From contig NIVC01000299.1 of the NCBI GenBank assembly GCA_002269645.1, positions 1 through 64,000 on the forward strand: DNA of 64,000 bases, read 5' to 3'. Numbering within the stretch: the stretch's first letter is position 1; each line of letters starts with the position of its first letter. The notes beneath the pieces are model-generated. The model searched no databases and had not been told where the DNA came from. It saw only the letters and a program-made list of their open reading frames with translations. Both the position numbers and the translations under genes were made by a program. Shown piece after piece: positions 160 to 63,612 of this stretch. The DNA comes from Macrostomum lignano (Eukaryota).

Positions 160-2979
160 CATGCGTCCATGTACGAAACTGGTGGATGGCAACACGAGAA
201 TTCTCTCAGACGATGAAGTTGTTCAAGTTCGGAAGCTGCTCAGGCGGTACGGCGGCTGTACATCCTGTTTCAGCTCTGTTCGCCATCACCTTCACGGCTC
301 TTTTACTCTGTTCACGATGGCCTACCAGCAGAGGCGAATCCTGGATCCTGAGAGCAAGCAGTTCAAGTGAGTCACTTTTTGTGCTGTCTTTAGGAATAAG
401 GGTGGTAGAGGATCTGGGAGGCTGGCCCAGCAACTGGGATCTGGGAGGCTGGCCCAGCAACTGAGGATCTGGGAGGCTGGCCCAGCAACTGAGGATCTGG
501 GAGGCTGGCCCAGCAACTGGGATCTGGGAGGCTGGCCAGCAACTGAGGATCTGGGAGGCTGGTCTACCAACTGAGGATCTGGGAGCTGGCTTAGCAACTG
601 AGGATCTGAGAGGCTGGCTTAGCAACTGAGGATCTGGGAGGCTGGCTTAGCAACTGAGGATCTGGGAGGCTGGTCCAGCAACTGAGGATCTGGGAGGCTG
701 GTCTACCAACTGAGGATCTGGGAGACTGGCCCAGCAACGGAGAATCTAGGAGGCTGGCCCAGCAACTGAGGATCTGGGAGGCTGGCCCAGCAACTGGGGA
801 TCTGGGAGGCTGGCCCAGCAACTGAGGATCTGGGAGGCTGGTCTACCAACTGAGGATCTGGGAGCTGGCTTAGCAACTGAGGATCTGAGAGGCTGGCTTA
901 GCAACTGAGGATCTGGGAGGCTGGCTTAGCAACTGAGGATCTGGGAGGCTGGTCCAGCAACTGAGGATCTGGGAGGCTGGTCTACCAACTGAGGATCTGG
1001 GAGACTGGCCCAGCAACGGAGAATCTAGGAGGCTGGCCCAGCAACTGAGGATCTGGGAGGCTGGTCCAGCAACTGAGGATCTGGGAGGCTGGTCCAGCAA
1101 CTGAGGATCTGCGAGACTGGCCCAGCAACGGAGAATCTAGGAGGCTGGCCCAGCAACTGAGGATCTGGGAGGCTGGTCCAGCAACTGAGGATCTGGGAGG
1201 CTGGTCCAGCAACTGAGGATCTGCGAGACTGGCCCAGCAACGGAGAATCTGGGAGGCTGGCCGCAACTGAGGATCTGGGAGGCTGGTCCAGCAACTGAGG
1301 ATCTGGGAGGCTGGTCCAGCAACTGAGGATCTGGAGACTGGCCCAGCAACGGAGAATCTTGGAGGCTGGTCCAGCAACTGAGGATCCGGGAGGTTGGCAA
1401 GCAACTGAGGATCTGAGAGGCTGGCTTAGCAACGGAGGATCTGGAGGCTGGCTTAGCAACTGAGGATCTGGGAGGCTGGCCCAGCAACTGAGGATCTGGA
1501 GGCTGGTCTAGCAACTGAGGATCCGGGATGCTGGCCCAGCAACTGAGGATCTGGGAGGCTGGCTTAGCAACGGAGGATCTGGGAGCTGGCTTAGCAACTG
1601 AGGATCTGAGAGGCTGGCTTAACAACGGAGGATCTGGGAGGCTGGCTTAGCAACTGAGGATCTGGGAGGCTGGCCCAACTGAGGATCTGGGAGGCTGGTC
1701 TAGCAACTGAGGATCTGAGAGGCTGGCTTAGCAACGGAGGATCTGGGAGGCTGGCTTAGCAACTGAGGATCTGGGAGGCTGGCTTAGCAACTGAGGATCT
1801 GGGAGGCTGGCTTAGCAACTGAGGATCTGGGTGGCTGGTCCAGCAACTGAGGATCTGGGAGGCTGGTCTAGCAACTGAGGATCTGGGAGGCTGGTTCAGC
1901 AACTGAGGATCTGGGAGGCTGGTCTAGCAACTGAGGATCTGGGAGGCTGGCTTAGCAACTGAGGATCTGGGTGGCTGGTTCAGCAACTGAGGATCTGGGA
2001 GGCTGGCCCAGCAACTGAGGATCTGGGAGGCTGGTCTAGCAACTGAGGATCTGAGAGGCTGGCTTAGCAACGGAGGATCTGGGAGGCTGGCTTAGCAACT
2101 GAGGATCCGGGAGGCTGGCCCAGAAACTGAGGATCTGGGAGGCTGGCAGCCCAGCAACTGAGGATCCAGGAGGTTGGCCCAGCAACTGAGGATCTGAGAG
2201 GCTGGCTTAGCAACGGAGGATCTGGGAGGCTGGCTTAGCAACTGAGGATCTGGGAGGCTGGCTTAGCAACTGAGGATCTGGGAGGCTGGCTTAGCAACTG
2301 AGGATCTGGGAGGCTGGCTTAGCAACTGAGGATCTGGGAGGCTGGTCTAGCAACTGAGGATCTGGGAGGCTGGTTCAGCAACTGAGGATCTGGGAGGCTG
2401 GTCTAGCAACTGAGGATCTGGGAGGCTGGTCCAGCAACTGAGGATCTGGGAGGCTGGCTTAGCAACTGAGGATCTGGGTGGCTGGTTCAGCAACTGAGGA
2501 TCTGGGAGGCTTGTCTAGCAACTGAGGATCTGGGAGGCTGGTTCAGCAACTGAGGATCTGGGAGGCTGGCCCAGCAACTGAGGATCCGGGAGGCTGGCCC
2601 AGCATCTGAGGATCTGGGAGGCTGGCTTAGCAACGGAGGATCTGGGAGGCTGGCCAAACCTTCCAATGCACGGACTCAGAGCCTGTGCGCTACCTAACGA
2701 TGAGGAAGTCAGAGCCGTTGTACACCCTGCGGGAGCGTGTGCAATAGCCAAGTCAAGCTGCTCCTGACAGCTCAGCCACTGACCGAACTGACTCGCAGGG
2801 CCATGCTGTACGCTATGTCGTCATCCTCGCTGCTGGCAATGCTGTTCTGCCTGATCATGTCGCACCTGCAGTGCCAGTCATTGGAGATCCTCAAAGCCGT
2901 GTACATCAAGAAGATGCAGAGCGGAGATCTTGTCGGTGAAGTCGCTGAAGAGCCGGACAGCACCAAGAAGACTGTGTGA
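160..2979 (+). CDS. 3' part of an unidentified gene (two putative exons; 5' end outside window)
   Basis: Exon 160-366 lies between TTTGACCAG and GTGAGT and ends in phase 2. Exon 2748-2979 follows CAATAG in the compatible phase and reads ..NQVKLLLTAQPL..AMLYAMSSSSLLAMLFCLIMSHL..KKTV-stop, with one hydrophobic stretch. No family recognised. Confidence 0.45.
408..2655. repeat. 28-bp minisatellite (GAGGATCTGGGAGGCTGGCCCAGCAACT)n, ~80 copies with variants
   Basis: Periodicity read directly (e.g. units at 463 and 491). Fills the putative intron 367-2747. Confidence 0.97.
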
Positions 2980-3143: not shown

Positions 3144-3709
3144 ATTCCTGCTGTAATCCTGCTGTATTCCTGCTGTATTCCTGCTGTATTCCTGCTGTAC
3201 TCCTGCTGTATTCCTGCTGTATTCCTGCTGTATTCCTGCTGTGTTCCTGCTGTATTCCTGCTGTAATCCTGCTGTATTCCTGCTGTATTCCTGCTGTACT
3301 CCTGCTGTATTCCTGCTGTATTCCTGCTGTATTCCTGCTGTATTCCTGCTGTGTTCCTGCTGTATTCCTGCTGTAATCCTGCTGTATTCCTGCTGTATTC
3401 CTGCTGTATTCCTGCTGTACTCCTGCTGTATTCCTGCTGTATTCCTGCTGTATTCCTGCTGTGTTCCTGCTGTATTCCTGCTGTATTCCTGCTGTTTTCC
3501 TGCTGTATTCCTGCTGTATTCCTGCTGTATTCCTGCTGTATTCCTGCTGTATTCCTGCTGTATTCCTGCTGTATTCCTGCTGTGTTCCCGCTGTAATCCT
3601 GCTGTATTCCTGCTGTGTTCCCGCTGTATTCCTGCTGTATTCCTGCTGTATTCCTGCTGTGTTCCTGCTGTATTCCTGCTGTATTCCTGCTGTGTTCCTG
3701 CTGTATCCT
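3144..3709. repeat. 11-bp minisatellite (TATTCCTGCTG)n, ~50 copies
   Basis: Read directly; accounts for the repetitive ORFs at 3069-4071. Confidence 0.97.
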
Positions 3710-4088: not shown

Positions 4089-6195
<2,107 letters not shown>

Positions 6196-6496
6196 TGCTT
6201 ATTCTGGCACTCGACCGACTTGTTCTTCTTTTTCTATTTTGAATCGAAATTGCTGTCAAAACGTTGTTGGACTTTAATAGAAATAAAAATATGGTAAATA
6301 ATAAGACCGATTTCTTCAAAAGCATGTAAAATCCCTATTTTTGCTCACTATCTGATCTCTTGCTGATTTATACTACTGTTATCGCAGTAGTATGATTTGA
6401 ACATAAAATTACATTTTTATAATATTTAGGACATTTGAATGTCGTCAAAAACTGTCAGCAAATTGATTGCCAGCTATTTGACGCCCAACAATTTAA

Positions 6497-6681
6497 GGGT
6501 TTGGATTTAGGTTGGGGCTTTGTTTGGGGTTTAGTTTAGGTTTAGATTAGAGTTTATTTTAGGCTTAGTTTATGGTTTCGCTTCGAATTTTTGTTTAGGG
6601 TTTAGGTTAGGGTTTAGGTTAGCGTTCAGCTAAGGTTTAGGTTTGGGTTTAGGTTAATGTTTAGGCTAGGGTTGGGGTTGG
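6497..6681 (+). repeat. Degenerate telomere-like (TTAGGG/TTTAGG) tract
   Basis: e.g. TTTAGGGTTTAGGTTAGGGTTTAGGTTAG at ~6594-6622; strongly G/T-biased. Confidence 0.6.
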
Positions 6682-7187
6682 CGACAGTCAGTTGTCGTAG
6701 ACGCCTGTGCGTCATGGACAGAACGGAGAGGTGAAAAGCCATTAAATTAACAACAAATAAATGCCGCAGCAGTTTAGATCCAGGGGGGTGGCACAGACCT
6801 GGGCCTCACAACCAGGAAACTCGGCAGGCGGACTCGAAACCCGTAGCCGCACTGCAGTGCGATAAGCTGGGCCACCGAGTCATTAAATTCATCGGACTGC
6901 ACATTCGATTCGCACCGCTGGTGGCTGCGATAAGCTCTGGGAGGCCGCCAGCTGCTTCTCGCGAGCTGCCGTCCCACCTCTGCGTCTCCCTTCCCCCGTC
7001 TCCCTGCCGCTGTCTCTCTTTCCAGTAGAAACTGCAGGGACTCTCCAAGCAGGCCAGGGAGCTGCAATTCCTCACTAAAGTTTTGGGTATTTTTACTCAG
7101 TTGCCCAGCCGAAGCAGTCGACAGCACTAAACTTGATCGCCAGCCCAGCAGTCTGCCGATGCCAACGGCCCTATGCGAAGGCAATTC

Positions 7188-10100
7188 ATGGAGCGAGTCG
7201 GGCTGCTGCTATTCGCCTTGGTGTGCGTGCAGCTGCCGCAGCCGCACAGCCACGGCCACGATGGTCTTGAGCCAAATCAGCTGTTGGAATCGGCGTACAA
7301 TCCGAAATTTACTGAATCAGGGTGAGTTTCCCATCCTAGCTCCTAACATTGGAGCTTGGCTACCGATTGTGACTCCTACCTCTCCAAGACAGTGACTCCC
7401 AACTCTCCAAGACAGTGACTCCCAACTCTCCAAGACAGTGACTCCCAACTCTCCAAGACAGTGACTCCCAACTCTCCAAGACAGTGACTCCCAACTCTCC
7501 AAGACAGTGACTCCCAACTCTCCAACACAGTGACTACCAACTCTTCAAGACAGTGACTCCCAACTCTCCAAGACAGGGACTGCCAACCCTCCAAGACAGT
7601 GACTCCCAACTCTCCAAGACAGGGACTGCCAACCCTCCAAGACAAGTGACTCCCAACTCTCCAACACAGTGACTCCCAACTCTCCATCACATTTAACTAG
7701 ACAATATAAGGATTAAAAATACCCCACCATAGGTACGGCATCTGCGATCTTCATAACGACGTCCCTGTGGTACAGAGCTCTCTCATCACAATATACTCAC
7801 CGACGATAAGCAACGATAGCAATCTCTATCCACCGAATGTCAACTGCTCCGTGCTCATCCGCGCGACTGAGCCCGGCGCCCTGTTCCAGATCAAGTTCAG
7901 CCACCTGCACATTGAAAAGCCGGACGACCAGTCATGCGTTCGGGATAGTCTGGTCTTTGAAGAGGCCGCTTTCAACTCCAGCGTCGAATGCTGCGGCAGC
8001 GTCTGCACCCTGAGCGACGGCCGACAAGACACCGTTTGGAAGAGCCTTGGCTCGGACATTCGGTTAATCTTTCGATCGGACAGTCAAATTGAGAAAACGG
8101 GCTTCAAGGTGACTTTGTCGCAGTACCTGCCCGTGCACTGCATCAGCGGAGAGCAGAACCTCGAGGCCACAACGGATAGCATCGTCTCAATCGACAGGCC
8201 CAATGCGGACCGCGTGAGCCTATGCTATGTAAACATAACTTCGAGCTCGCCACGAAGGATGTTGCTGCTTGACTTCGAATCGTTCCGGTTGGACTATTCA
8301 GGCGCAAGCTGTGTGTACGACCGGCTAGAGATCATTCATGCCATTGGCAACGAAACTTTCAACGATTATGGCTGTGGCTATCGAACGCCGTTCTACTACC
8401 ACATTAACTCCGATTCGGCCTCAATCGCCTTCAGAACTGACAGCAAGTCCACCAGCCGGTTCAGAATCCGGTACACCGACTTAAAGAGGGAAGAGTGGGA
8501 GTACCGCAAGCGCATTGACGAGTTCACTCTGGAAGATGACAAGCCCGTGACTATCGATCTCAGCCAAGTGGCGCCAAACTACGTCACGGAGATTGACAGC
8601 GCCTTTTACAACCACAGCACCTACATCTTCAAGTTCGAGACCGCCTACGCCAGAAAAATCAACGCCACGCTGTCTTTCGTCAATGCAACTTCGCGCAACC
8701 AATCCGAGTGCTACAGAAACCTGATCTTGGCCTACTCGGACCGGCTGATGGCGTCTCCTACACCAAGGGACCTGCTGGAGCACAACTTCATGAACGAACC
8801 AAACACGACCGGCTTGACTTGTCTTGACCCGGTAGAATTTGACAGGCTGTCGCCTCAGATGATGGTGTTTGTATTCTCGCTCTACTCTCGAGTGCTGGAC
8901 CCGCTAGTTTTGACTGTCCAGGCCAGCAGAATGCGAGACCGCATGGGCAACGATTCTAGCGAAGTTGGCGACAGTCCAATGATTGCTGACTCACGAATCG
9001 CCACCTATAAAAACTTCAGCTTCATCTACTCTTTCAAATCTTTACAGGAAAAAATGCACGCAATTCAACCCAGACAGAGATCTGTGCAGCTAACCGTGCC
9101 GCTCTACATCAAATCCGCTGAATGGAAGTCCGATGTGTACTTTAACTTTACTCGATTCGGTTTGTACACCGACCCGCCTGATCCGAGCTGTCGCATGAGC
9201 GGCTTCATCATCATCCTGACGGACGCAGACGGTAATGAAGAGACAGAAGGCCCCTACTGCGCGCCCAGCCCCCAATAGTGGTTATGGCTCGGAACAAGTC
9301 GATGGAAACGTGGATTTATTATTTTGAAGACCCGAGAGGGCAGGAGCAGGTGGTCCCTGACGGTGTCGTCCTCAGCTTTAATATAAACCGGTACAAATGC
9401 GACCACGTGAACTTCTGGAACCAGAAACAGGAAATTATTAACGCCGACTGCGTCATGCTGCAGTCGCCCGTGAAAAAGTGCATTGAAAGTGTGTCCAATC
9501 ACTCTGTGACCTTCGTTACACCCGAGCCGTATCTCGTATTTTCGTTATTCACAAACCGATTCTTGACGGCGCTCATGTTGCTCAACGAAACCCAGAGCCT
9601 TCCAGGTCCCTTATCGATGTTCGACAAGGCCAACTGCTCCTCGACCTTAAACTTCGTTCGTCAGCAGATAAATGGATCCTACTTGGTGACTGTCAGCTAC
9701 ACCTCCACCTGTCCGTTCTCGCCTGATCACTGGTCTATCCACCTGGAGCAAAAGTGTCGAACTCGCGTGCCGCACAACGAAATTAAAAATGTCAATTCAG
9801 ATAGCGAGCAGATTGTTCAACATGAATGCGGCTTCTTGGAGACCCCAAATTACCCTTTCGCGTACCAGAACTACGAGGAGCCCCTGGTATGGATCTTCGA
9901 CCCGCTGCAAAGTCGGAACGAGTCGGAAAGCCTCAGTCACTACTACGAGTTTTCGCTGGACGTGTTCACCCTCGACGTGTGCCTGAACAGCAAGCTCCTC
10001 ATGTCCGAGTCCATCAACGGCTCATTCAGCAAGGAGACAACTCTCTGTGGCTACAAGAAAGGGGAGAAGTTCTCCACTATATCAAGTCGAAGACTGCTGT

Positions 10101-13100
10101 TGATGTTTCTGGTAAGTTTACAGGTAAAGTATTTGCACAGAGTTTTTGTTTCCAGATAGGGCAAAGGCCTATTGCATTTAGCCGAACTATTGAGAGGTTG
10201 GTCTTTGAAGATTAAAGTATAAGTGGTAAGATCATTCATTCACCTCCCGCATTTCCAGGCCAGTAAGATATCCCAAACGTCCAGCTCCTACCAGGGCTTC
10301 TCCATATCTTTCAAGCTGAAGCAGGACGCCAGTCGCATGAAGTTCGAGCCCTGCTCCGAGCCAGGATGGATTAGCTTCAACAACTCCTGCTACGCGTACA
10401 AGCGTCCAAGCGCTCCGGTCTCCTGGGATGAAGCCTCAATGGAGTGCTCAAGGCTTGGCGGGCACCTGGTCAGCATCCAGAGCCAGGATGAGATGAACGC
10501 CATCAAACAGATGCTGCTCTACGAATGGCACTCGGAGGCGTTCGCCCATCCGGACGTGTTCATCTACATCGGGCTGCGGGCTCGGCCGGAGGTGCGAACG
10601 GAGTTCCGACCGACAGTTCGAATTCCTCAAGAGGACGAGAGCTTCAACATGGACTATTTCTACCTCAGCAATGTAAGTGGTTGCTCTATAAGACTTGAAA
10701 GTTTCTGTAGGCCCTATAGCTGTTGGACCCTGTTATTGCGATAGAGTGACTGCAATGCTTTGCTGCCTTGCAAAATGTTTATAATTGCGAGGAAGGTGTT
10801 AAAATAATCGAAGCATCAGCCAGTCAGCTGTTCTTCAATAAAACTTAAAATTAGTTTCTACTTCAATAGTTAAATTTAAGTAGCCCCTGACTTAGGTGCT
10901 ACACGGACCTTTTCTGCTAAATTCTGCTTAAAACTACACCTTATTTACGAGCTACATGTACAAATTTCCAGAACTTTGAGTGGAGCAACGGCGAGCCCTT
11001 CGTCTTTCACGAGTGGTTCCCCTCGCATTATGAGACGGTCTACTCGCGCTCTTCGCCCAACGTTCAAGCCTTCATCAATGAGGAATTCCCACAGCCGAGC
11101 AACGATCCCAATTACCCGTGCGTGGGCATGATGCTGCACAACCCGCGGCACCACTCCAACTGGATCAAGGTGCCCTGCAACATCGAGATCAAGGGCCAGA
11201 GCCACATCTGCGAACGGTCTCGAGACGACAATCACAAGGTAGAGTTGGAGCGCCATTTCAACCAGCAGCTGGAGAAGATCCGGGCGGAGGCTCCCACCTG
11301 CGCAGACAACTGGATCGAGCACGAGCGTCAGTGCTACATGCTGTTGACTCTCAACAGTAGTGCCGTGGAACCGAACCTGACTCTGGATGCGGCCAGGCTC
11401 ATGTGCGAGAGGCTGGGCAGCCAGATTGCCACAATGCCGAAGGAGGTCAGCAAGCAGAAGCCTTTCAATCAAATGCTGCGAGTCTGGCGCTACTCGGTGC
11501 AGAGAGGCCGCATATTCGTGTTCTCATCGGACAGGAATCCCTTTTCCGATTACAGCAGAGCTGGCAGCGACGATGATCTAGCGAACGCTTTCAATCCGGT
11601 GGGGTTCAGCTGGATTCATGATGATGTCGAAGCGCCCATATTTCATGAAAACAGACGCGCTGGCGGTGAGATCGGAAGGCTGCCAACTCGGTCCGTGCTT
11701 TGCGAGCGTAGCCCGGTGGCCGAGCAGGTCGGTTGCCGTAGCAACCAATTCGCCTGTCTCGATGGGACCTGCATCAGCAGCGACGGACAGTGTGATGGAA
11801 AGAAGGACTGTCCCAGTGAGTGCATGAAGCGTCAAAAAACGAAAAGACATGAAAACCAGAGCATTCAGTGCTTCTTTAGCAGCAGACGACTCATTTTTAG
11901 CATAGCGGACATCAGTTAAATTATCAATAGTTTGTGAGTTTGTTGGTTCGTCCCTTGTAGTAGATTTTCACTAATCATCGCAGTGAAAGGTGGATCTCTG
12001 AACTTTATAACAATAGCACGTCTTTTTTACTGTTGCACTGTAAGCATACTTAAAGAAAAGTGAGAGAAGTTAGAGTCTGAAGATGCCTGCTTTGGTTGAG
12101 CCAGCTTCAAAAATTCTCTCTTACAAATTCGTTTCTTTCGAAGGTGGCGAGGACGAAATGGACTGCAGCTCGGAAGTTGTCGATCGATTCTTCGAGTGCA
12201 ACAGCGGCGGCACTCATTTGCAGCGGATCAGCTGGTCTCGGCTGTGCGACCACAAGGTCGACTGCAGCACAGGCTTGGACGAGGCCGACTGCCAGTTCAG
12301 CCCGTGCAAAGCGAACGAATTCCAATGCGAGAGAACCAAGGAGTGCATTCCCAATGAGCAGCGGTAAATACTAAACCTAATTTTGGACCTCAGGATCTTT
12401 TTCTTATGTTTGGCCAAGAAGGGAATGAATAATTCATCTGTCTTGCCTCACTAGCAGTGTACAGCGATATATATTTACCTGTAATCATGGTCTATCGACC
12501 GAGATAATATTTCTTCAAATTAAGTGCGAAAAAACAGGTTATTGAGTTTATCAGCAAAATTCTGAATTTCTACTTCAAAGTATGTATAGTTGCAAACCTC
12601 AGGGCATGGCTAATTCAGCCACTCAGAGGTACTTGGTGATGTAAAATGTCTAAAACCAACCCCATTTCAAATGAATTCAGCTGCAACGGCATCAGCTCGT
12701 GCCAGGACCTCACCGACGAGCAGAACTGCGAAACCTGCAACGGCTTCCAGTGCCTCAGCGGTCGGTGCATCCCGAACGGCCTGGTGAACGACACGCAGGT
12801 CGATTGTCCGGGCAGCCTGCTAGAAGACGAGGCCATGACGTGCCTACGCGCCAACAACTGCACCCGAGGCGAGGACGTCATCGATCCGGGCTCGCGGAAG
12901 TTCCCGGACTGCCCCGACAGCCAATGGGAGCGCTGCATGTTAAACCACGTGAAGTGTTTTCCCAGGCGCGACGCGTGCGTCTTCGATCGGCGGCAGTTTG
13001 GCAAGCAGGTCTGCCCGAACATGGAGCACCTGCGCAGCTGCGTGGGCGACCGTGCGGGCTTTGGCTGTCGGCGTCTCTTCCAGTGCCCCTCTGGCTACTG

Positions 13101-15243
13101 CATCCCCGTCTACAGGCTGTGCGACGGCGTGCAGGACTGCAGCGATGGGGCCGATGAGATCGACTGCTCTGAGCCTCCTCTGGTGCGTGCTAAGCATTTG
13201 CTGTTTTGCAAACTGTCTGATAATTTGATAGTTTATAATTGACATCCACCTCCATTACAGCTTATTGGTCACCTACGCTGTCGCAGCCCTCACGGCGTAC
13301 TTGGCTCGTTCAACATCAGCGTGCCGGCGGAGAATTCCTGCGACGGGATCGCTCACTGTCGAGACGGCGAGGACGAGGCCTTCTGCGACATGGAATGCCG
13401 GCAGCCCTGCAACTGTCGTGGCTACATCACGGAGTGCCTGCGTCCACTGAACTTCAACATCAATCAGACTGTCTCGCCGTTGACCAGGGCGCTGTACTTG
13501 AGTGGCAACACGCAGGTCTCTGCGAAGCCTGGTGACTTTGACCACCTGTCCCTGCTTGGCCTGCTTGAAATGCGCAGTATCGGCCTTAAAGAGATTGCTG
13601 TTGGCCTGTTCTTTTACCTGGTGAATCTGCGCTACCTTGATTTGAGTAACAACGAAATCAGCATCATACCAGGCCATGTCTGGGCCGGTCTGGTACATCT
13701 GAACACGCTGCTGATTCGAGGTAACCCGATAGTAACCATTGAGAGCTTCGGCTTCGCTCACCTGCCACTCGTAGTGGACCTCGACCTCTCGAATATGAGC
13801 ATAGCCAGCCTGCCGAACTATTTTCTCTTCGATAGCAACAGCACGCGCCACCTGAATCTGAGCCGGAACCCACTAAAAAGCATCGAGGAGATGGCTTTCA
13901 CCGGCGGGCCGCATCAGCTCAACACCCTGGACTTGTCTGGCACCGGCCAGGACGTCTACATTCCCATCGGGACATTTTCAAAGCTGAGCCGGCTGGACAA
14001 TCTGTACACCGACTCCTTCAAATTCTGCTGTCTGGCTGATGGCATCGCCGTGAACTGCACACCGCCAGCTGACGGCTTCAGCTCGTGCGACGATCTACTT
14101 GGCGATCTGGCGCAGCAGGTCATGGTTTGGATCTTCGGCTGCCTGGCTTTATTTGGAAACCTGTTCGTCATCGCGTGGCGAGTGGTGAAGAAGCTGCTGA
14201 AGAAGACTACGGACTTTCTGATCTTAAACCTCAGTCTGGCAGACCTGCTGATGGGTGTGTACCTGTTGATCATAGCTGGCACCGACACCTCCTACCGCCA
14301 CATTTACATCGCTCACGACGACCAGTGGCGCGCCTCCAGCCTGTGCACCGTCTGCGCCATCCTGGCCACCATCAGCAGCGAGGTCTCCGTCACCATTTTA
14401 GCCTTCCTGTCGTACGACCGCTACAAGCTGACTGTGCAGCGCTTCAAGCAGCACGGCTGGACCCTGCAGAGAGTGGCCATCATAGTTGGCAGCACCTGGC
14501 TCGCAACTTGCAGTTTCTCGCTGCTGTTTCTATCGGAGACAGTGCGCAGGAACATGCCCTATAACCTGAACGCGGCCTGCTCGCCCTTCTACCTAGACAG
14601 CCAGATCCCCATGCTCCAGCGGGTCCCGCAGTTTGTTGCCATCGTGTACAACTGCGCCGCTTTTGCCTTCATGACCGGCTGCTACCTGCGCGTGTTTCTG
14701 TACCTCAAGAACACGCGCCGAAAGGCGAAGCGCAAAGCGATGGACATCGACCACTTGATGGCTCGCCGTTTATTCCTGCTGGTGCTGACGGATCTCATCT
14801 GCTGGCTGCCAACCATCGTGCTGTTCTTGTTAGTGTCGTCCGGCTACAAAATCTCCCGCACGACCACTACCGGCCTGGTGATATTCGCCCTGCCAATCAA
14901 CTCGGCGTTGAACCCCTACCTGTACACGGTCTCCCGCCTGCGGATGTTCTGTCGGGAGAGCAAGGAGAAGCTGCACCGGCGCCAGGCTCTCGAGACAATT
15001 TCGGCCTATCTGGAAAACCGACGTCGCCTGTCCTCGACGAAAGACCTGACGATCGAGCCCAGGCAGTCGCCTTCCCAGTCGCAGACGTGCGCCCAAACGC
15101 AGACAAATTTTGGGTTCGAATTCGACGAACCAGTTCAGCTGCATCACCGCGCCAACGCTTCTTCTCCCGACGCGGTACACGTACATGCAGTCCAAACCCA
15201 TGACAGCGCTGATGAGGATCCGAGTGACGGAGTATTCCTGTAA
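7188..15243 (+). CDS. GRL101/RXFP-like LRR GPCR with extended ectodomain (multiple CUB, 2 C-type lectin, ~7 LDLa, LRRs, 7TM); ~2,158 aa after repairing one frame break
   Basis: Exons 7188-7321 (signal peptide MERVGLLLFALVCVQL), 7733-10111, 10259-10672, 10972-11815, 12144-12363, 12681-13182 and 13261-15243, all phase-compatible GT..AG. Sum is 6476 nt, one short of 2159 codons; the frame breaks at the C5 run 9269-9273. Motifs: CUB (YPPNVNC..FRSD..GF), CTL (WDEASMEC..GGHLVSI; WSNGEP), LDLa (CDGVQDCSDGADEIDC), LRR (LRYLDLSNNEI), hinge LYTDSFKFCC, TM motifs GNLFVI, NLSLADLLMG, DRY, CWLP, NSALNPYLY. Confidence 0.92.
7368..7686. repeat. 23-bp minisatellite (GTGACTCCCAACTCTCCAAGACA)n in GPCR intron 1
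   Basis: Units at 7392, 7415 and onward; lies within intron 7322-7732. Confidence 0.95.
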
Positions 15244-20397: not shown

Positions 20398-20632
20398 TAT
20401 TTAAAATTTGCTTGTTCTTATTGTATGTTTAAATCTTATATAATAGGTTGTTATATTTCTCTAAAATGTTGTGATAAATTTTTATATACATAAAAATAAT
20501 ATTGCATTATATCTCTTTATAAGATAAAAAGAGGCATATAAAATGACCATGCATCCTATAGACTAGGCCTATAGGTATCAATGTAGTTTTGTTTGTAAAA
20601 TTATTTTTATTTGAATGTATGTTAGCACAAAA

Positions 20633-20999
20633 GGGGGGCCGTAGCGCAGTGGTAGTGCAGTTGCTCTGGTGTGCCAGCGACCCAGGCTTGATTCCAAGTG
20701 CAGTCACATTAATTTGGGGCTGAATTGGAATCTCTGCTTGGCTCTGCTCGTGCAATTAACAGCCTTGAGAGCCAACCCCCTAAGGCGCAGTGAAGTGTAC
20801 ATGCCTAACGATAATATAAAGTTAGGGCCGCTGTACACTCCTGTGTGAGTGTGTGCCTGCGTACGTATCCGCGCGCTTGTATGCCTGCTCAGGGGAGTCG
20901 GCGGAATGGGCAGTAATGCCTCTCGCTGGTTGTGTGCCTATGTCGCTTAAAGTGCGCCAGGGTGCACACAACCCCCCTGCCTCTAAAAAAATAAAAAAA
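20633..20999 (+). mobile_element. tRNA-derived SINE, copy B (~365 bp)
   Basis: A-box TAGCGCAGTGG, B-box-like GGCTTGATTCC and A-rich tail. Probable TSD TGTTAGC(A/G)CAAA at 20620-20631 and 21001-21012 (11/12 match). Confidence 0.8.
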
Positions 21000-21023: not shown

Positions 21024-21353
21024 TTGCTGAGCTGGTCCAGCACTCATGGGAGGGATTGCTGAGCTGGTCCAGCACTCATGGGAGGGATTGCTGAGCTGGT
21101 CCAGCACTCAGGGGAGGGATTGCTGAGCTGGTCCAGCACTCAGGGGAGGGATTGCTGAGCTGGTCCAGCACTCAGGGGAGGAATTGCTGAGCTGGTCCAG
21201 CACTCATGGGAGGGATTGCTGAGCTGGTCCAGCACTCAGGGGAGGGATTGCTGAGCTGGTCCAGCACTCAGGGGAGGGATTGCTGAGCTGGTCCAGCACT
21301 CATGGGAGGGATTGCTGAGCTGGTCCAGCACTCATGGGAGGGATTGCTGAGCT
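21024..21353. repeat. 32-bp minisatellite (TGCTGAGCTGGTCCAGCACTCATGGGAGGGAT)n, ~10 copies
   Basis: Units at 21025, 21057 and onward; internal hairpin GCTGG-T-CCAGC; no spacers. Confidence 0.95.
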
Positions 21354-24293: not shown

Positions 24294-24830
24294 ATCCTGA
24301 TCCCCCAGCTCCCGATCCTGATCCCCCAGCTCCCGATCCTGATCCCCCAGCTCCCGATCCTGATCCCCCAGCTCCCGATCCTGATCTCTCAGCTCCCGAT
24401 CCTGATCCCCCAGCTCCCGATCCTGATCCCCCAGCTCCCGATCCTGATCCCCCAGCTCCCGATCCTGATCCCTCAGCTCCCGATCCTGATCCCCCAGCTC
24501 CCGATCCTGATCCCTCAGCTCCCGATCCTGATCCCCCAGCTCCCGATCCTGATCCCCCAGCTCCCGATCCTGATCCATCAGCTCCCGGTCCTGATCCCTG
24601 ATCCCTTAACTCCCGATCCTGATCCCTCAAGTCCCGATCCTGATCCCTCAGCTCCCGGTCCTGATCCCTGATCCCTTAACTCCCGATCCTGATCCCTCAA
24701 GTCCCGATCCTGATCCCTCAGCTCCCGGTCCTGATCCCTGATCCCTTAACTCCCGATCCTAATCCCTTAGCTACCGATCCTGATCTCTCAAGTCCCGATC
24801 CTGATCCCTGATCCCTCAGCTTCCGATCCC
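24294..24830. repeat. 21-bp minisatellite (CCTGATCCCCCAGCTCCCGAT)n degrading towards the 3' end
   Basis: Read directly; explains the PAPDPD, RDQDRE and GSGAG ORFs. Confidence 0.95.
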
Positions 24831-24860
24831 TCGGCTCACTATCCCTCAGCTCCCAGTCCT

Positions 24861-25020
24861 GATCCCTCAGCTGAGTCAGCTCCCAGTCCTGATCCCTCAG
24901 CTGAGTCAGCTCCCAGTCCTGATCCCTCAGCTGAGTCAGCTCCCAGTCTGAGTTTATTGACAGACTGGATAAAGCTGGGGAAGGTGTTGCTAAGTAAACT
25001 CGAGTAGCTGGCTTGAGTCA
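24861..25020. promoter_or_regulatory. Cluster of AP-1/MARE-like sites created by a 30-bp tandem repeat
   Basis: GCTGAGTCAGC occurs in three 30-bp units (TGAGTCA at 24872, 24902, 24932), plus a fourth TGAGTCA at 25014, all 160-310 bp upstream of ATG 25180. Function is inferred only. Confidence 0.35.
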
Positions 25021-27826: not shown

Positions 27827-28200
27827 GCAGGACGGGTCGAGCTTCGGATTTCCGAGAAATAAAACTTTGATAAACTGAACTAGAATTACTGTGAGAAGCA
27901 TTCAGCCGCAGGCGTTGGACACAGTTGACCCAGAGAGTCAGAGGTGCATCCCCTCTGACTCTCTCGTTCGTCTCTTTCACGCACTTTGATCCTTGAGCCC
28001 AAGCTTACGACCCAGTTTGCAAACACAACTTTGAATGTCGCTTTGAAGTTCTAAAATAAAATCTAAAAGCTTTCTGGATTCTGATTGTAAGCAAGTTTAC
28101 TCAAGTCTATCAGGGCTCGTGTTCAGAACTTTTTACTCATTCATCGAGTCAATTAAGAAATAGATCATAAAACTGCGATCGAAAATCGTTATGCGATTAA

Positions 28201-31200
28201 GCAATCATCAAACTGCAATCAAAGCAATCATCAAACTGCAATCAAAGCAATCATCAAACTGCAATCAAAGCAATCATCAAACTGTAATCAAAGCAATCAT
28301 CAAACTGCAATCAAGCAATCATCAAACTGCAATCAAAGCAATCATCAAACTGCAATCAAAGCAATCATCAAACTGCAATCAAAGCAATCATCAAACTGCA
28401 ATCAAAGCAATCATCAAACTGCAATCAAAGCAATCATCAAACTGCAATCAAAGCAATCATCAAACTGCAATCAAAGCAATCATCAAACTGCAATCAAGCA
28501 ATCATCAAACTGCAATCAAAGCAATCATCAAACTGCAATCAAAGCAATCATCAAACTGCAATCAAAGCAATCATCAAACTGCAATCTAGCAATCATCAAA
28601 CTGCAATCAAAGCAATCATCAAACTGCAATCAAAGCAATCATCAAACTGCAATCAAAGCAATCATCAAACTGCAATCAAAGCAATCATCAAACTGCAATC
28701 AAAGCAATCATCAAACTGCAATCTAGAAATCATCAAACTGCAATCAAAGCAATCATCAAACTGCAATCAAAGCAATCATCAAACTGCAATCAAAGCAATC
28801 ATCAAACTGCAATCAAAGCAATCATCAAACTGCAATCAAAGCAATCATCAAACTGCAATCTAGAAATGATCAAACTGCAATCTAGCAATCATCAAACTGC
28901 AAACAAGCATTCATCAAACTGCGATCAAACAATCATCAAACTGCAATCAAAGCAATCATCAAACTGCAATCTAGCAATCATCAAACTGCAATCTAGCAAT
29001 CATCAAACTGCAAACAAGCATTCATCAAACTGCGATCAAACAATCATCAAACTGCAATCAAAGCAATCATCAAACTGCAATCTAGCAATCATCAAACTGC
29101 GATCAAGCAATCATCAAACTGCAATCAAAGCAATCATCAAACTGCAATCAAAGCAATCATCAAACTGCAATCAAAGCAATCATCAAACTGCAATCAAAGC
29201 AATCATCAAACTGCAATCTAGCAATCATCAAACTGCAATCAAAGCAATCATCAAACTGCAATCTAGCAATCATCAAACTGCAATCTAGCAATCATCAAAC
29301 TGCAATCAAAGCAATCATCAAACTGCAATCTAGCAATCATCAAACTGCAATCAAAGCAATCATCAAACTGCAATCTAGCAATCATCAAACTGCAATCAAA
29401 GCAATCATCAAACTGCAATCTAGCAATCATCAAACTGCAATCAAAGCAATCATCAAACTGCAATCAAAGCAATCATCAAACTGCAATCAAAGCAATCATC
29501 AAACTGCAATCAAAGCAATCATCAAACTGCAATCAAAGCAATCATCAAACTGCAATCTAGCAATCATCAAACTGCAATCAAAGCAATCATCAAACTGCAA
29601 TCTAGCAATCATCAAACTGCAATCAAAGCAATCATCAAACTGCAATCAAAGCAATCATCAAACTGCAATCAAAGCAATCATCAAACTGCAATCAAAGCAA
29701 TCATCAAACTGCAATCAAAGCAATCATCAAACTGCAATCAAAGCAATCATCAAACTGCAATCAAAGCAATCATCAAACTGCAATCAAAGCAATCATCAAA
29801 CTGCAATCAAAGCAATCATCAAACTGCAATCAAAGCAATCATCAAACTGCAATCTAGCAATCATCAAACTGCAATCTAGCAATCATCAAACTGCAATCAA
29901 AGCAATCATCAAACTGCAATCAAAGCAATCATCAAACTGCAATCAAAGCAATCATCAAACTGCAATCAAAGCAATCATCAAACTGCAATCAAAGCAATCA
30001 TCAAACTGCAATCAAAGCAATCATCAAACTGCAATCAAAGCAATCATCAAACTGCAATCAAAGCAATCATCAAACTGCAATCAAAGCAATCATCAAACTG
30101 CAATCAAAGCAATCATCAAACTGCAATCAAAGCAATCATCAAACTGCAATCAAAGCAATCATCAAACTGCAATCAAAGCAATCATCAAACTGCAATCAAA
30201 GCAATCATCAAACTGCAATCAAAGCAATCATCAAACTGCAATCAAAGCAATCATCAAACTGCAATCAAAGCAATCATCAAACTGCAATCAAAGCAATCAT
30301 CAAACTGCAATCAAAGCAATCATCAAACTGCAATCAAAGCAATCATCAAACTGCAATCAAAGCAATCATCAAACTGCAATCAAAGCAATCATCAAACTGC
30401 AATCAAAGCAATCATCAAACTGCAATCAAAGCAATCATCAAACTGCAATCAAAGCAATCATCAAACTGCAATCAAAGCAATCATCAAACTGCAATCAAAG
30501 CAATCATCAAACTGCAATCAAAGCAATCATCAAACTGCAATCAAAGCAATCATCAAACTGCAATCAAAGCAATCATCAAACTGCAATCTAGCAATCATCA
30601 AACTGCAATCAAAGCAATCATCAAACTGCAATCAAAGCAATCATCAAACTGCAATCAAAGCAATCATCAAACTGCAATCTAGCAATCATCAAACTGCAAT
30701 CAAAGCAATCATCAAACTGCAATCAAAGCAATCATCAAACTGCAATCAAAGCAATCATCAAACTGCAATCAAAGCAATCATCAAACTGCAATCAAAGCAA
30801 TCATCAAACTGCAATCAAAGCAATCATCAAACTGCAATCAAAGCAATCATCAAACTGCAATCAAAGCAATCATCAAACTGCAATCAAAGCAATCATCAAA
30901 CTGCAATCAAAGCAATCATCAAACTGCAATCAAAGCAATCATCAAACTGCAATCAAAGCAATCATCAAACTGCAATCAAAGCAATCATCAAACTGCAATC
31001 AAAGCAATCATCAAACTGCAATCAAAGCAATCATCAAACTGCAATCAAAGCAATCATCAAACTGCAATCTAGCAATCATCAAACTGCAATCAAAGCAATC
31101 ATCAAACTGCAATCAAAGCAATCATCAAACTGCAATCAAAGCAATCATCAAACTGCAATCTAGCAATCATCAAACTGCAATCAAAGCAATCATCAAACTG

Positions 31201-39901: not shown

Positions 39902-40414
39902 TCAGTCTGTCTTTGATGATCTTCAAAACTCTACAATAAAAAAGAAACAAATTTATTTGCAAACTGTTCTACACGTAGAAGGGTTGTCAATAAGAATTTT
40001 CTGATTGAATATATTGTCAGAGCAAGTGAAAAATTTAAAAAATCCTGTTCTTGGAATACTGCAACTGTCTATGGTAAAATCCCTGACAAATTTATCGATT
40101 TTTAATGTTGCATCCCTGCAGTCCCGGCCTAGGCAGTGCGGTGGGTCCTACATGGTACAGTATTTAATACATTACGGGTCCTTGCCAGCCTGCGCTCGAG
40201 CGCGAGTGCGAGCAATCTCCCAAAGTCTGGGGCGTCAGGATGCACCCACGCAGCCTTCCCACGCGTCGGGACGCGGTGATGTCGGCCACCTTCAGCAAGA
40301 CGTCGGGACGCACAGGCTTGCGTTCAGATTACGCAATACAGTACCGATGTGTCTAACCTAGGTCGGCGTCAGGACACTAGCCCCACAGCCCACCACCCCA
40401 CCAGGGGGAAAGCA

Positions 40415-40490
40415 GCACCGCCCGCCGCCCGGCCCAGCCAATCAGTAACTCGCCAAAAAAGGGCAAAGCTGACCGCAGCCAATCACAGCT
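40415..40490 (+). promoter_or_regulatory. Putative promoter: GC boxes plus two NF-Y-type CCAAT boxes
   Basis: AGCCAATCAG (CCAAT at 40438) and AGCCAATCAC (40479), 41 bp apart, preceded by CCGCCC motifs. Downstream splice signals (donor 40834, acceptor 40895, donor 40955, acceptor 41077) suggest 5'-UTR exons leading to the MSP-domain gene. Confidence 0.35.
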
Positions 40491-41147
40491 CAGAGCCCGA
40501 GATAAACAACAATACCGCTTAAGCCCAACTGCGGTATACGCGATGGGGGGATGACCCACAACGAAAAAAGGGACGCAAAAAGGGGTGACTCAGACCGTCG
40601 GAGGACAGAATGCCCTCGCACTGCAAAAGTGCGCGTGTATATAGTGCATACGGCAAAGTAATATACGCCAAATTTGTCATGGCGTCAATGACCATTACAA
40701 ATTGCAATTGTTCATAACAAGACACTACCCCGGCCTTTCACGGGCAGGTCACACAATCTACTGACTTCACAACAAGCTGGGGTATGAAAATGAGAGGAAT
40801 GCAAATTATCGGTAGATTTATGAAGGTTCTCAGGTGAGCCGAGCAGAAATTTAATCCTCGCATTTCTTTCAAACAAAATCATCTGGTTTTTCCAGCGTTC
40901 TTCCTCGTAGGAACAACGACTCTTTCTCAGCTCCGTTGGTAAAATAGTCGACAGGTATGGCTCGTATAAAATATGATGATAAGTTTTAAAAAGGAGAGAG
41001 GCTGTCAGCAACGTTACTATAGCTGGTAATTCAAAGCGTGTGCCTTCGAGCGCATCTGTGCGGTTGTGCGTGTTCAGGGTTCAACGGAATGGGCATTAAT
41101 GCTTGCCTCCTCGGCATGTCGGAGATTTATTAATAACGCTATTTTTT

Positions 41148-63265: not shown

Positions 63266-63296
<31 letters not shown>

Positions 63297-63357
63297 GTGT
63301 CTGTCTGTGTGTCTGTCTGTCTGTCTGTCTGTGTGTCTGTCTGTGTGTCTGTCTGTG

Positions 63358-63398
<41 letters not shown>

Positions 63399-63489: not shown

Positions 63490-63532
<43 letters not shown>

Positions 63533-63545
63533 GTGTCTGTCTGTG

Positions 63546-63612
<67 letters not shown>

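What the first reader, a model, noticed from the sequence alone, without database searches (positions are those of the whole stretch)
7188..15243. Giant GRL101-type GPCR with CUB and C-type lectin modules in front of LDLa-LRR-7TM
Seen: one phase-consistent gene with at least three clear CUB domains (plus degenerate ones), two C-type lectin domains, ~7 LDLa, LRRs and a rhodopsin-type 7TM. Established: Lymnaea GRL101 has LDLa repeats + LRR + 7TM and RXFP1/2 have a single LDLa; CUB and CTL are not part of those canonical receptors. Inference: a lineage-expanded receptor coupling glycan or protein pattern recognition to G-protein signalling, possibly in immunity or chemosensing.
Basis: partly seen in the sequence, partly recalled or inferred. 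Interest (0 to 1): 0.7.

Follow-up and report, generated by a model that had tools for sequence, protein, structure and literature searches.

The report
Flatworm orphan receptor with CUB/lectin ectodomain
This is one copy of a Macrostomum lignano (free-living flatworm) gene for a very large relaxin-receptor-like G-protein-coupled receptor; the module layout looks exotic but recurs in unstudied predicted proteins of many invertebrate phyla, so this is a new member of an existing, uncharacterised family and not a flatworm invention.

Summary
The gene is real, on the + strand from ATG 7173 to TAA 15243. It is locus Mlig009194.g3 of Macrostomum lignano: GenBank PAA85960.1 matches my model 100% from aa 568 to the end. 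Layout: signal peptide, 2 clear CUBs, about 440 aa unassigned, 1 degenerate CUB, 1 clear C-type-lectin-like domain (CTLD) plus 1 doubtful, 6 LDLa, LRRs, hinge, and a rhodopsin-type 7TM closest to RXFP1. The window copy is not cleanly phase-consistent. A C5 run at 9269-9273 is C6 in the sister copy g2, which gives one 2163-aa ORF (PAA57333.1). The 47-nt 'intron' that would rescue the frame is exon-like, and no public model of any copy uses it. The GenBank models (g1-g3) come from an RNA-seq-guided transcriptome, which supports one transcript. The architecture is not lineage-specific. Among the 118 non-M. lignano representatives with a 7TM hit (best 150), 26 have CUB+CTLD+LDLa and 13 have CTLD+LDLa, typically [CUB]n-CTLD-LDLa6-LRR-7TM. 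They come from tick, oyster, nemerteans, brachiopod, hemichordates, echinoderms and amphioxus. The 7TM lies outside the RXFP clade and never groups with the 12-LDLa receptors I take to be canonical GRL101. The CTLD lacks the sugar-binding motifs (QPS/WIK), so glycan sensing is unsupported. The three flatworm copies are near-identical duplicates. The ligand is unknown. Interest is modest.

The parts
7173..7321 (+). Exon 1: start codon and hydrophobic signal-peptide-like N-terminus (MRRQFMERVGLLLFALVCVQLP...); donor GTGAGT at 7322
   Evidence: same start as PAA57333.1
7322..7732 (+). Intron 1 (411 nt), holds a 23-nt minisatellite at 7369-7686
   Evidence: same splice sites in copy g2
7733..10111 (+). 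Large exon (a single exon in the intact copy g2). Encodes CUB1, CUB2, the unassigned region and most of the degenerate CUB3.
7743..8117 (+). CUB domain 1 (aa 54-178)
   Evidence: Pfam CUB E 3e-8; 73 bits with the family profile
8139..8474 (+). CUB domain 2 (aa 186-297)
   Evidence: Pfam CUB E 4e-7; 55 bits with the family profile
8475..9796 (+). About 440 aa with no assignable domain (aa 298-738), beta-rich. aa 500-597 is a possible CUB vestige that spans the frame break.
   Evidence: no Pfam or PDB hit; weak CUB profile hit (i-E 0.004, hhalign 28%); AF2 without an alignment was uninformative
9269..9278 (+). Frame break: C5 run (9269-9273), then TAG (9276-9278) in the upstream frame. Copy g2 has C6 and reads ...GPYCAPSPPIVVMARNK...
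   Evidence: the only exonic indel between the copies
9232..9278 (+). Candidate 47-nt 'intron' (GTAATG..CAATAG) that would restore the frame. Judged to be coding sequence, not an intron.
   Evidence: 60% GC like the exons, against 36-39% in five of the six true introns (intron 1, with its minisatellite, is 50%). Not used in any public model of g1, g2 or g3. It would delete the Cys of a CUB-like 'G.YC..P' motif.
9797..10312 (+). Degenerate CUB 3 (aa 739-861), split by intron 10112-10258
   Evidence: family CUB profile over its full length, 8.5 bits, i-E 2e-4; hhalign 83%; no Pfam or PDB hit
10352..11223 (+). C-type-lectin-like domain 1 (aa 875-1065) with a long loop insert, split by intron 10673-10971. 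Motifs are QPS / WIK, not EPN/QPD / WND.
   Evidence: Pfam Lectin_C E 6e-8; 122 bits with the family profile; motif alignment
11281..11712 (+). Doubtful second CTLD-like region (aa 1085-1228)
   Evidence: only weak Xlink/UL45 hits; phmmer against CTLD1 E 3e-4; hhalign 15%
11713..13386 (+). Six LDLa modules (aa 1229-1270, 1278-1312, 1313-1352, 1353-1390, 1453-1499, 1510-1545), with a 62-aa Cys-rich insert between the 4th and 5th. Crosses introns 11816-12143, 12364-12680 and 13183-13260.
   Evidence: Pfam Ldl_recept_a: four above the curated cut-off, two below; family profile finds six
13387..14151 (+). LRR N-cap, leucine-rich repeats and Cys-rich hinge
   Evidence: Pfam LRR_8, 5 stretches, E 3e-23; aligns with the RXFP1 LRRs and hinge
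14155..14925 (+). Rhodopsin-type 7TM domain with DRY, CWLP and NPYLY motifs
   Evidence: Pfam 7tm_1 E 2e-27, profile positions 1-260 of 260; RXFP1 7tmw E 1e-57; motifs
14926..15243 (+). Cytoplasmic tail and TAA stop codon

Best explanation
The interval holds one copy (Mlig009194.g3) of a single Macrostomum lignano gene for an orphan leucine-rich-repeat GPCR of type C, the relaxin-receptor/GRL101 group.

Its ectodomain is: signal peptide, CUB x2, about 440 unassigned residues, a degenerate CUB, a CTLD (plus a doubtful second one), LDLa x6, LRRs and a hinge. It belongs to a bilaterian-wide, unnamed subfamily with a conserved proximal core, [CUB]n-CTLD-LDLa6-LRR-7TM. This subfamily is distinct from RXFP1/2 (one LDLa) and from canonical GRL101 (about 12 LDLa).

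Shown: the gene structure, the domain content, identity with the public models, intact signalling motifs, purifying selection, and conservation of the layout.

Inferred by analogy with RXFP1: a protein ligand is captured by the LRRs and distal modules. The LDLa module next to the LRRs and the hinge relay this to the 7TM bundle. The receptor then couples to a G protein, probably Gs/cAMP. The CTLD probably binds protein, not sugar.

In this window the reading frame is broken by one missing C in a homopolymer run. I judge this more likely a long-read assembly error (about 60-65%) than a very recent real frameshift in a redundant copy (about 30%).
For: - Gene model: 7 introns if 9232-9278 is counted, all GT..AG, giving 2147 or 2163 aa.
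- Identity: PAA85960.1 (g3) is 100% identical to the model from aa 568 onward, with the same five downstream junctions. PAA57333.1 (g2, 2163 aa) is the read-through model with 9 aa differences. My exon coordinates transferred to the g2 locus translate exactly to it.
- Transcript support: the GenBank annotation derives from a genome-guided RNA-seq transcriptome with boundaries cut at trans-splice and poly(A) sites (PMC5730564).
- Receptor type: exon 8 matches RXFP1 best (E 1e-57), ahead of FSHR/LHCGR/TSHR (about 1e-34) and LGR4 (about 1e-27). The alignment runs unbroken through LRRs, hinge and 7TM. DRY, CWLP and NPYLY are present.
- Selection: 38 synonymous against 9 nonsynonymous codon differences between g2 and g3 (pN/pS 0.07). 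pS is the same up- and downstream of the break and pN is low on both sides.
- Same layout elsewhere: Saccoglossus, Lingula, Antedon, Branchiostoma, Dermacentor, Ostrea, Acanthaster and Tubulanus by Pfam; Lineus, Mactra, Glandiceps and Anneissia by my own profiles. Of the 118 non-M. lignano representatives with a 7TM hit, 39 carry a CTLD and 26 also carry CUBs, mostly with six LDLa.
- An unannotated animal contig (L005) shows the same arrangement: a large N-terminal ORF ending in the first half of the CTLD, then an ORF with the second half of the CTLD, LDLa, LRR and 7TM.
Against: - No cDNA or reads were available here. Continuity rests on a published transcriptome-based annotation of the sister copy, not on this copy.
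- In this copy the annotated CDS starts only at Met 568, because of the frame break.
- The 7TM is a long branch. Its grouping with the CTLD-LDLa6 receptors is weak (41/100 with Lineus), and it sits next to the RXFP clade in 20/100 replicates.
- Only NJ trees were made, with no type A/B outgroup.
- The ligand, the G-protein coupling and the tethered-agonist role of the LDLa are entirely by analogy.
- About 440 aa of the ectodomain remain unassigned.
Confidence: 0.85

Rival explanations
1. The window copy is a real pseudogene or truncated allele. A genuine 1-nt deletion in the C run ends the full-length ORF after aa 566. This leaves at most a secreted 567-aa CUB protein and/or an N-terminally truncated receptor started at Met 568. 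The g2 copy carries the function.
For: C5 against C6 is the only exonic indel between the copies. GenBank annotates g3 from Met 568 only. The genome holds redundant copies in which loss is tolerated. Copy g1 also has a private frame break in LDLa4.
Against: pN/pS is 0.07 and there is no excess of nonsynonymous change on either side of the break, so any inactivation would be extremely recent. A single-base deletion in a homopolymer is the typical error of the long-read data used for this assembly (my own knowledge). Private single breaks in two of three otherwise about 99.5% identical copies look more like errors than decay.
Confidence: 0.3
2. One reading: 9232-9278 is a real 47-nt intron, and this copy makes a 2147-aa receptor lacking 16 residues of the CUB-like vestige.
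For: GTAATG..CAATAG with matching phases restores the frame. Removing the 48-nt equivalent in g2 would also stay in frame.
Against: The segment has 60% GC, like the exons. Five of the six true introns here have 36-39% GC, and the shortest is 78 nt. No public model of g1, g2 or g3 uses it. g1 and g2 translate straight through it, and the g3 model would have been 2147 aa if the junction had read support. An older model of another copy (P0123) skips a larger, different span, which looks like a predictor's patch.
Confidence: 0.05
3. There are two separate genes or mature mRNAs: an upstream secreted CUB protein and a downstream CTLD-LDLa-LRR-7TM receptor. They could be cut from one precursor by spliced-leader trans-splicing, which is common in this species.
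For: Public databases hold 'CUB domain-containing protein' models of 886-1370 aa without a 7TM. About 7% of M. lignano transcriptional units are polycistronic precursors.
Against: Those shorter models overlap the receptor model. They run into CTLD1 or LDLa4 and end at assembly frame breaks or model truncations, not at natural stops. The boundary-aware annotation gives g2 one 2163-aa CDS. Orthologues in ten other phyla-level lineages join CUB, CTLD, LDLa, LRR and 7TM in one protein.
Confidence: 0.05
4. One reading: a lineage-specific innovation that couples glycan or pathogen pattern recognition to G-protein signalling in immunity or chemosensing.
For: CUB and CTLD folds occur in many innate-immune recognition proteins (my own knowledge). 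Relatives in tick and oyster add ApeC, and relatives in tick (sub-threshold), oyster and starfish add F5/8-type-C modules; both are known from microbe- or sugar-binding proteins elsewhere. A starfish 'GRL101-like' with six LDLa is enriched in sensory tentacles (PMC6267866).
Against: The architecture is pan-bilaterian, not lineage-specific. The CTLD lacks the EPN/QPD and WND residues needed for Ca2+-dependent sugar binding, in this protein and in most relatives inspected. No expression or functional data exist for this gene. The conserved six-LDLa/LRR core fits a conserved endogenous ligand better.
Confidence: 0.1

Closest known systems
RXFP1/RXFP2 (vertebrate relaxin/INSL3 receptors; type C1 LGRs; structure 7TMW)
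   Same: Best solved-structure match (E 1e-57). The alignment runs unbroken through the LRRs, the Cys-rich hinge and all seven helices. An LDLa module lies directly N-terminal of the LRRs. CWxP and NPxxY are shared.
   Different: RXFP1/2 have one LDLa and no CUB or CTLD. This protein has six LDLa and about 1200 further ectodomain residues. The RXFP clade is recovered 100/100 without it. It has DRY where RXFP1 has EKY.
Lymnaea stagnalis GRL101 and its orthologues (type C2 LGRs; arthropod 'LGR5')
   Same: LGRs with several LDLa modules, all orphans. NCBI names many relatives of this protein 'GRL101-like'.
   Different: Canonical GRL101 has 12 LDLa and 6 LRRs and nothing else (Tensen 1994, as cited in PMC8286064). 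The representatives with 9-12 LDLa form their own clade (67/100) that never includes this protein. I take that clade to be canonical GRL101 on LDLa count; only one member is named, a Ptychodera 'GRL101-like'. This protein has six LDLa plus a CTLD and CUBs.
Uncharacterised [CUB]n-CTLD-LDLa6-LRR-7TM proteins, e.g. Saccoglossus XP_006821766.1, Lingula XP_013411505.1, Dermacentor XP_054927509.1, Ostrea XP_048738543.2, Acanthaster XP_022098818.1, Tubulanus XP_074645996.1
   Same: Same order of modules. Six LDLa by my own profile in most of these. The same non-canonical CTLD motif ('QPx ... W-I/V-K-hPC' in Lingula and several others). About 29-38% identity over LRR and 7TM.
   Different: The distal N-terminal modules vary: ApeC, F5/8 type C, Kringle, EGF_CA, and 1-7 CUBs. 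The flatworm protein instead has about 440 unassignable residues and degenerate CUBs. Orthology is not resolved by the 7TM tree.
Type A/B LGRs (FSHR, LHCGR, TSHR; LGR4-6)
   Same: LRR ectodomain, hinge and rhodopsin-type 7TM.
   Different: Clearly weaker matches (about 1e-34 and about 1e-27); these receptors have no LDLa modules.

Membership tests
LGR (leucine-rich-repeat-containing rhodopsin-class GPCR) | Complete rhodopsin-type 7TM domain whose closest relatives are LGRs | tested here: met
   Pfam 7tm_1 E 2e-27, profile positions 1-260 of 260. The top PDB matches are all LGRs.
LGR (leucine-rich-repeat-containing rhodopsin-class GPCR) | LRR ectodomain with a Cys-rich hinge directly before TM1 | tested here: met
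   LRR_8, 5 stretches, E 3e-23. The hinge aligns with that of RXFP1.
Type C LGR | LDLa module(s) N-terminal of the LRRs, and a 7TM nearer to RXFP than to type A/B | tested here: met
   Six LDLa. RXFP1 scores 1e-57 against 1e-34 (type A) and 1e-27 (type B).
Type C1 (RXFP1/2, Drosophila Lgr3/Lgr4) | A single LDLa (rarely two), and membership of the RXFP clade | tested here: not met
   Six LDLa. The RXFP split is recovered 100/100 without this protein; it is sister to that clade in only 20/100 replicates.
Canonical GRL101 (type C2) | About 10-12 LDLa followed by LRRs with no other ectodomain modules, and membership of that clade | tested here: not met
   Six LDLa plus CUB and CTLD. It groups with the clade of 9-12-LDLa receptors in 0/100 replicates. 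That clade is identified as canonical GRL101 by LDLa count only.
[CUB]n-CTLD-LDLa6-LRR-7TM subfamily (database predictions only, unnamed) | Module order CUB(s), CTLD, six LDLa, LRR, 7TM | tested here: met
   Local profiles give CUBx2-CTL-LDLax6-7TM for the flatworm protein and the same pattern in 26 relatives. Pfam confirms it in 8 named relatives.
[CUB]n-CTLD-LDLa6-LRR-7TM subfamily (database predictions only, unnamed) | 7TM clusters with other members | tested here: inconclusive
   Long branch. It sits nearest to the Lineus CTLD-LDLa6 proteins in 41/100 NJ bootstraps. No ML tree and no outgroup.
Carbohydrate-binding C-type lectin | EPN or QPD tripeptide plus WND motif (Ca2+ site 2) | tested here: not met
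   QPS and WIK occupy the aligned positions. Most relatives inspected also lack WND.
CUB domain | Match to Pfam PF00431 above the curated cut-off | tested here: met
   Met for two domains (34.3 and 30.7 bits against 21.4). The third candidate (aa 739-861) fails Pfam and is seen only with a family-specific profile.
Signalling-competent class A GPCR | D/ERY, CWxP and NPxxY microswitch motifs | tested here: met
   DRY, CWLP and NPYLY are present. Actual coupling cannot be tested with these tools.
RXFP-like activation mechanism | The LDLa and linker act as a tethered activator; the agonist is a relaxin/insulin-like peptide | not testable with these tools
   Analogy only. Needs receptor expression and mutagenesis.

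The most novel reading that the evidence does not exclude
The [CUB]n-CTLD-LDLa6-LRR-7TM receptors form a third, ancient class of type C LGRs. They are present from flatworms to amphioxus but absent from vertebrates and from the usual insect models. Their conserved CUB-CTLD-LDLa6 core would recognise something other than an insulin/relaxin-like peptide, such as a matrix, lipoprotein-like or microbial protein, and pass this directly to G-protein signalling. The swappable distal modules (ApeC, discoidin, kringle, or the flatworm's unassigned 440 aa) would tune specificity by lineage. I found no paper in the searchable library that describes this class.
Probability: 0.25. Interest if true: 0.6.

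Novelty: new member of a known kind. Interest (0 to 1): 0.3.

Why it matters
For the gene itself the result is mainly a correction. Public annotation of this copy starts at Met 568, and older models stop inside the lectin domain. The true product is a 2163-aa receptor, as in copy g2.

The wider point is modest but useful. 'GRL101-like' in databases hides a well-conserved, apparently undescribed subfamily of orphan LGRs. Its core is CUB-CTLD-six LDLa, and it is separate from both relaxin receptors and the receptors that look like classical GRL101.

M. lignano has RNAi, in situ hybridisation and transgenesis, so it could be a convenient animal in which to find out what this subfamily does. The result does not show a new kind of system, and the glycan-sensing and lineage-innovation readings are not supported.

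Tried and rejected
- The full-length protein search returned only two irrelevant LDLR/LRR proteins, because repeat words swamped the candidate list. I split the query instead.
- Partial relatives from ENA assembly ERZ24900295 (L001, L002) showed only LDLa exons within 10 kb upstream, too little to judge their N-termini.
- PDB sequence searches with aa 744-863 and aa 453-602 gave only chance hits. Pairwise phmmer and hhalign among the protein's own pieces gave weak signals only.
- AlphaFold2 without an alignment on exon 2 gave pLDDT 33 even over the two Pfam-supported CUBs. It therefore had no power, so I did not run a fold search or a second job.
- Literature searches for GRL101/LGR together with CUB or C-type lectin found no description of this architecture; most 'cub' hits were DOI strings of Current Biology. 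A search for 'Mlig009194' found nothing.
- I considered and rejected the 47-nt intron, the two-gene reading and the sugar-binding lectin reading. The reasons are given under the rival explanations.

Full report
**What is in the interval**

The window is animal DNA rich in mini- and microsatellites. On the + strand, long stop-free segments between 7137 and 15240 join through canonical GT..AG sites into one gene. The exons are 7173-7321, 7733-10111 (with a frame break, see below), 10259-10672, 10972-11815, 12144-12363, 12681-13182 and 13261-15243 (TAA). The annotated start is 7173.

**Whose gene it is**

A search with the N-terminal 1178 aa gave one hit, a Macrostomum lignano 'CUB domain-containing protein'. 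An exhaustive search with exon 8 gave a 1596-aa top hit. This hit is GenBank PAA85960.1, BOX15_Mlig009194g3. It is 100% identical to my model from Met 568 to the end and uses the same five downstream splice junctions. The window is therefore copy g3 of M. lignano locus Mlig009194.

The same 90% cluster holds two other copies:
- g2 (PAA57333.1, UniRef A0A267E6X1) is 2163 aa. It is my read-through model with 9 amino-acid differences.
- g1 (PAA93754.1) is 1370 aa and ends at a private frame break in LDLa4.

I fetched the g2 locus (L003, NIVC01002501.1). My exon coordinates carried over to it translate exactly to PAA57333.1.

The GenBank annotation of this assembly comes from a genome-guided RNA-seq transcriptome, with gene boundaries set from trans-splicing and poly(A) evidence (PMC5730564). 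The CUB/lectin half and the LDLa-LRR-7TM half are therefore on one annotated mRNA.

**The frame break**

In the window, the frame of 7733-9275 ends at TAG 9276-9278, and the downstream frame opens at 9239. The only exonic indel between g3 and g2 is C5 (window 9269-9273) against C6. With C6 the sequence reads '...GPYCAPSPPIVVMARNK...', as in g1, g2 and two older models.

The frame can also be restored by splicing out 9232-9278 (GTAATG..CAATAG, 47 nt). I reject that intron for three reasons:
- The segment has 60% GC like the exons. Five of the six true introns have 36-39% GC; intron 1, which holds a minisatellite, has 50%.
- No public model of any copy uses it.
- The transcript-based g3 model starts at Met 568 instead of bridging the gap.

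Between g2 and g3 there are 38 synonymous and 9 nonsynonymous codon differences (pS 0.026, pN/pS 0.07). pS is the same on both sides of the break and pN is low on both. Any real inactivation would therefore be very recent. A one-base loss in a homopolymer is a typical long-read assembly error (my own knowledge). I put assembly error at roughly 60-65% and a real frameshift at about 30%.

**Domain anatomy**

Numbering follows the 2163-aa protein.

| Region (aa) | Assignment | Evidence |
|---|---|---|
| 1-27 | Signal-peptide-like N-terminus | hydrophobic core |
| 54-178 | CUB1 | above the Pfam cut-off |
| 186-297 | CUB2 | above the Pfam cut-off |
| 298-738 | Unassigned | no Pfam or PDB match; a faint CUB vestige at 500-597 |
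| 739-861 | Degenerate CUB | family profile 8.5 bits; hhalign 83% |
| 875-1065 | CTLD with a long insert | Pfam E 6e-8; family profile 122 bits |
| 1085-1228 | Doubtful second CTLD | weak hits only |
| 1229-1545 | Six LDLa, with a 62-aa Cys-rich insert between the 4th and 5th | four above the Pfam cut-off, two below |
| 1546-1800 | LRR cap, LRRs, hinge | LRR_8, 5 stretches |
| 1802-2058 | 7TM with DRY, CWLP, NPYLY | Pfam 7tm_1, full profile length |
| 2059-2163 | Cytoplasmic tail | about 100 aa |

**What kind of receptor**

Exon 8 matches RXFP1 best (7TMW, E 1e-57). FSHR, LHCGR and TSHR follow at about 1e-34 and LGR4 at about 1e-27. The RXFP1 alignment is continuous from the LRRs through the hinge to helix 7. 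This makes it a type C LGR.

NJ trees of the 7TM region, with 100 bootstraps on a 45-taxon subset, gave the following:
- The RXFP clade is recovered 100/100 without the flatworm protein.
- A clade of receptors with 9-12 LDLa is recovered 67/100 and never includes it. I take this clade to be canonical GRL101 on LDLa count; only one member is named, a Ptychodera 'GRL101-like'.
- The flatworm protein is a long branch. It sits most often with the Lineus CTLD-LDLa6 receptors (41/100) and sometimes beside the RXFP clade (20/100).

It is therefore 'GRL101-like' in the loose database sense only. It is not a member of the canonical GRL101 group or of the RXFP group.

**Is the architecture unusual?**

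No. The exhaustive search found 16,626 proteins at E <= 1e-3 and 1,115 at E <= 1e-30. I built profiles for CUB, CTLD and LDLa from relatives and applied them to the best 150 representatives. Of the 118 non-M. lignano sequences with a 7TM hit:

| Modules upstream of the 7TM | Number |
|---|---|
| CUB + CTLD + LDLa | 26 |
| CTLD + LDLa | 13 |
| CUB + LDLa | 1 |
| LDLa only | 60 |
| None of the three | 18 |

The pattern [CUB]n-CTLD-LDLa6-(LRR)-7TM recurs strikingly. Many of the shorter sequences are fragments.

Pfam confirms CUB, Lectin_C, LDLa, LRR and 7tm_1 together in Saccoglossus XP_006821766.1 (CUB x6), Lingula XP_013411505.1, Branchiostoma XP_078576616.1, Dermacentor XP_054927509.1, Ostrea XP_048738543.2, Acanthaster XP_022098818.1 and Tubulanus XP_074645996.1. 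In Antedon XP_071964993.1 Pfam finds all but Lectin_C, and the CTLD is seen by phmmer and my profile. Further members by my own profiles are in Lineus, Mactra, Glandiceps and Anneissia, and probably Pomacea (a Logan-derived representative clustered with a Pomacea protein). Several add other distal modules: ApeC, F5/8 type C, Kringle and EGF_CA.

An unannotated animal contig (L005) has the same arrangement. A large N-terminal ORF with a signal peptide ends in the first half of the CTLD. A second ORF then carries the rest of the CTLD, LDLa, LRR and 7TM.

All these proteins are labelled 'uncharacterized' or 'GRL101-like'. In the searchable literature I found type C1/C2 classifications and a starfish 'GRL101-like' with six LDLa (PMC6267866, PMC11863921, PMC8286064, PMC4079206). 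I found no description of CUB/CTLD-bearing LGRs. I found nothing on Mlig009194.

**'Lineage-expanded' and 'glycan recognition'**

The three M. lignano copies differ by about 0.4-0.6% in protein and about 2% in DNA, with different intron insertions. The assembly of the DV1 line is stated to be highly redundant because of extra large chromosomes. This is duplication of the whole region, not a receptor family expansion, and the window holds no second receptor gene.

In the CTLD alignment, the flatworm protein has QPS and WIK where sugar-binding C-type lectins have EPN/QPD and WND. The Lingula protein and several others share 'W-I/V-K-hPC'. The domain is best called C-type-lectin-like, and protein binding is the more likely role.

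**How it most likely works**

Shown: an intact, selectively constrained gene for a secreted-pathway type C LGR with all class A microswitch motifs.

Inferred from RXFP1: a protein ligand engages the LRRs and distal modules. The LDLa next to the LRRs and the hinge act on the 7TM. The receptor then signals through a G protein, probably Gs. The ligand is unknown. Insulin-like peptides have been proposed for GRL101 proper (PMC8286064), but that proposal need not transfer to this subfamily.

**Verdict**

The structural interpretation is right. The evolutionary and functional inferences are not supported. It is a new, mis-annotated flatworm member of an existing but unstudied receptor subfamily, of modest interest.

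Noticed in passing
window 28199-36812: An 8.6-kb satellite: 377 copies of the 23-nt unit AAGCAATCATCAAACTGCAATCA at 98% matches, with strong strand skew (GC skew about -0.5, AT skew about +0.45).
   Followed up: no
window 408-2655, 3144-3706, 4281-4735, 5277-5983, 21024-21353, 24294-24872, 37862-38819, 51170-51673, 63265-63650: An unusually dense set of mini- and microsatellites (units of 4-46 nt, including (GTCT)n and (CTGT)n). This fits the published 15% simple/tandem repeat content of the M. lignano genome. These arrays create many spurious long ORFs.
   Followed up: partly
window 55517-57697 (+): An open 727-aa ORF with reverse transcriptase (RVT_1, E 8e-23) and RNase H domains: a retroelement pol gene that may still be intact.
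   Followed up: partly
window 62849-64000 (+): Exon(s) of a kinesin motor-domain gene that runs off the window end, with a (CTGT)n array inside the locus.
   Followed up: partly
window 39482-44994 (+): An EGF-like exon (39482-39898), followed by three long ORFs (412, 422 and 389 aa) with no Pfam family apart from a sub-threshold MSP-domain hit. This is probably one or two uncharacterised genes.
   Followed up: partly
window 45728-46129 (-) and 59340-59672 (+): An inverted pair of small ORFs sharing the motif LQAEAG(I/L)xGAxxxYG(V/I)CQTGCNTVWVAC, with no Pfam match. They may be a duplicated small Cys-containing secreted or membrane protein.
   Followed up: no
L003 (NIVC01002501.1, copy g2) 6490-7158 and 9370-10085, against window introns 10673-10971 and 13183-13260: The sister copy has much longer introns 4 and 7 (669 against 299 nt; 716 against 78 nt). 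The extra piece in intron 4 is about 94% identical to window 20632-20991, so it is a dispersed repeat that inserted after the copies diverged.
   Followed up: partly
public models P0123, P0274, P0276, P0277 (M. lignano): Older or other-copy gene models of this locus are truncated or patched. There is a frameshift-looking stretch in CUB1 of A0A1I8HWR9, invented introns around the C run, and a private frame break in LDLa4 of g1. The public annotation of this gene is inconsistent across copies and assemblies.
   Followed up: partly
relatives P0145 (Dermacentor), P0166 (Ostrea), P0200 (Acanthaster): Members of the same receptor subfamily carry extra distal modules: ApeC (apextrin C-terminal domain), F5/8 type C (discoidin), Kringle and EGF_CA. 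The distal ectodomain therefore seems to be swapped between lineages while the CUB-CTLD-LDLa6 core is kept.
   Followed up: partly
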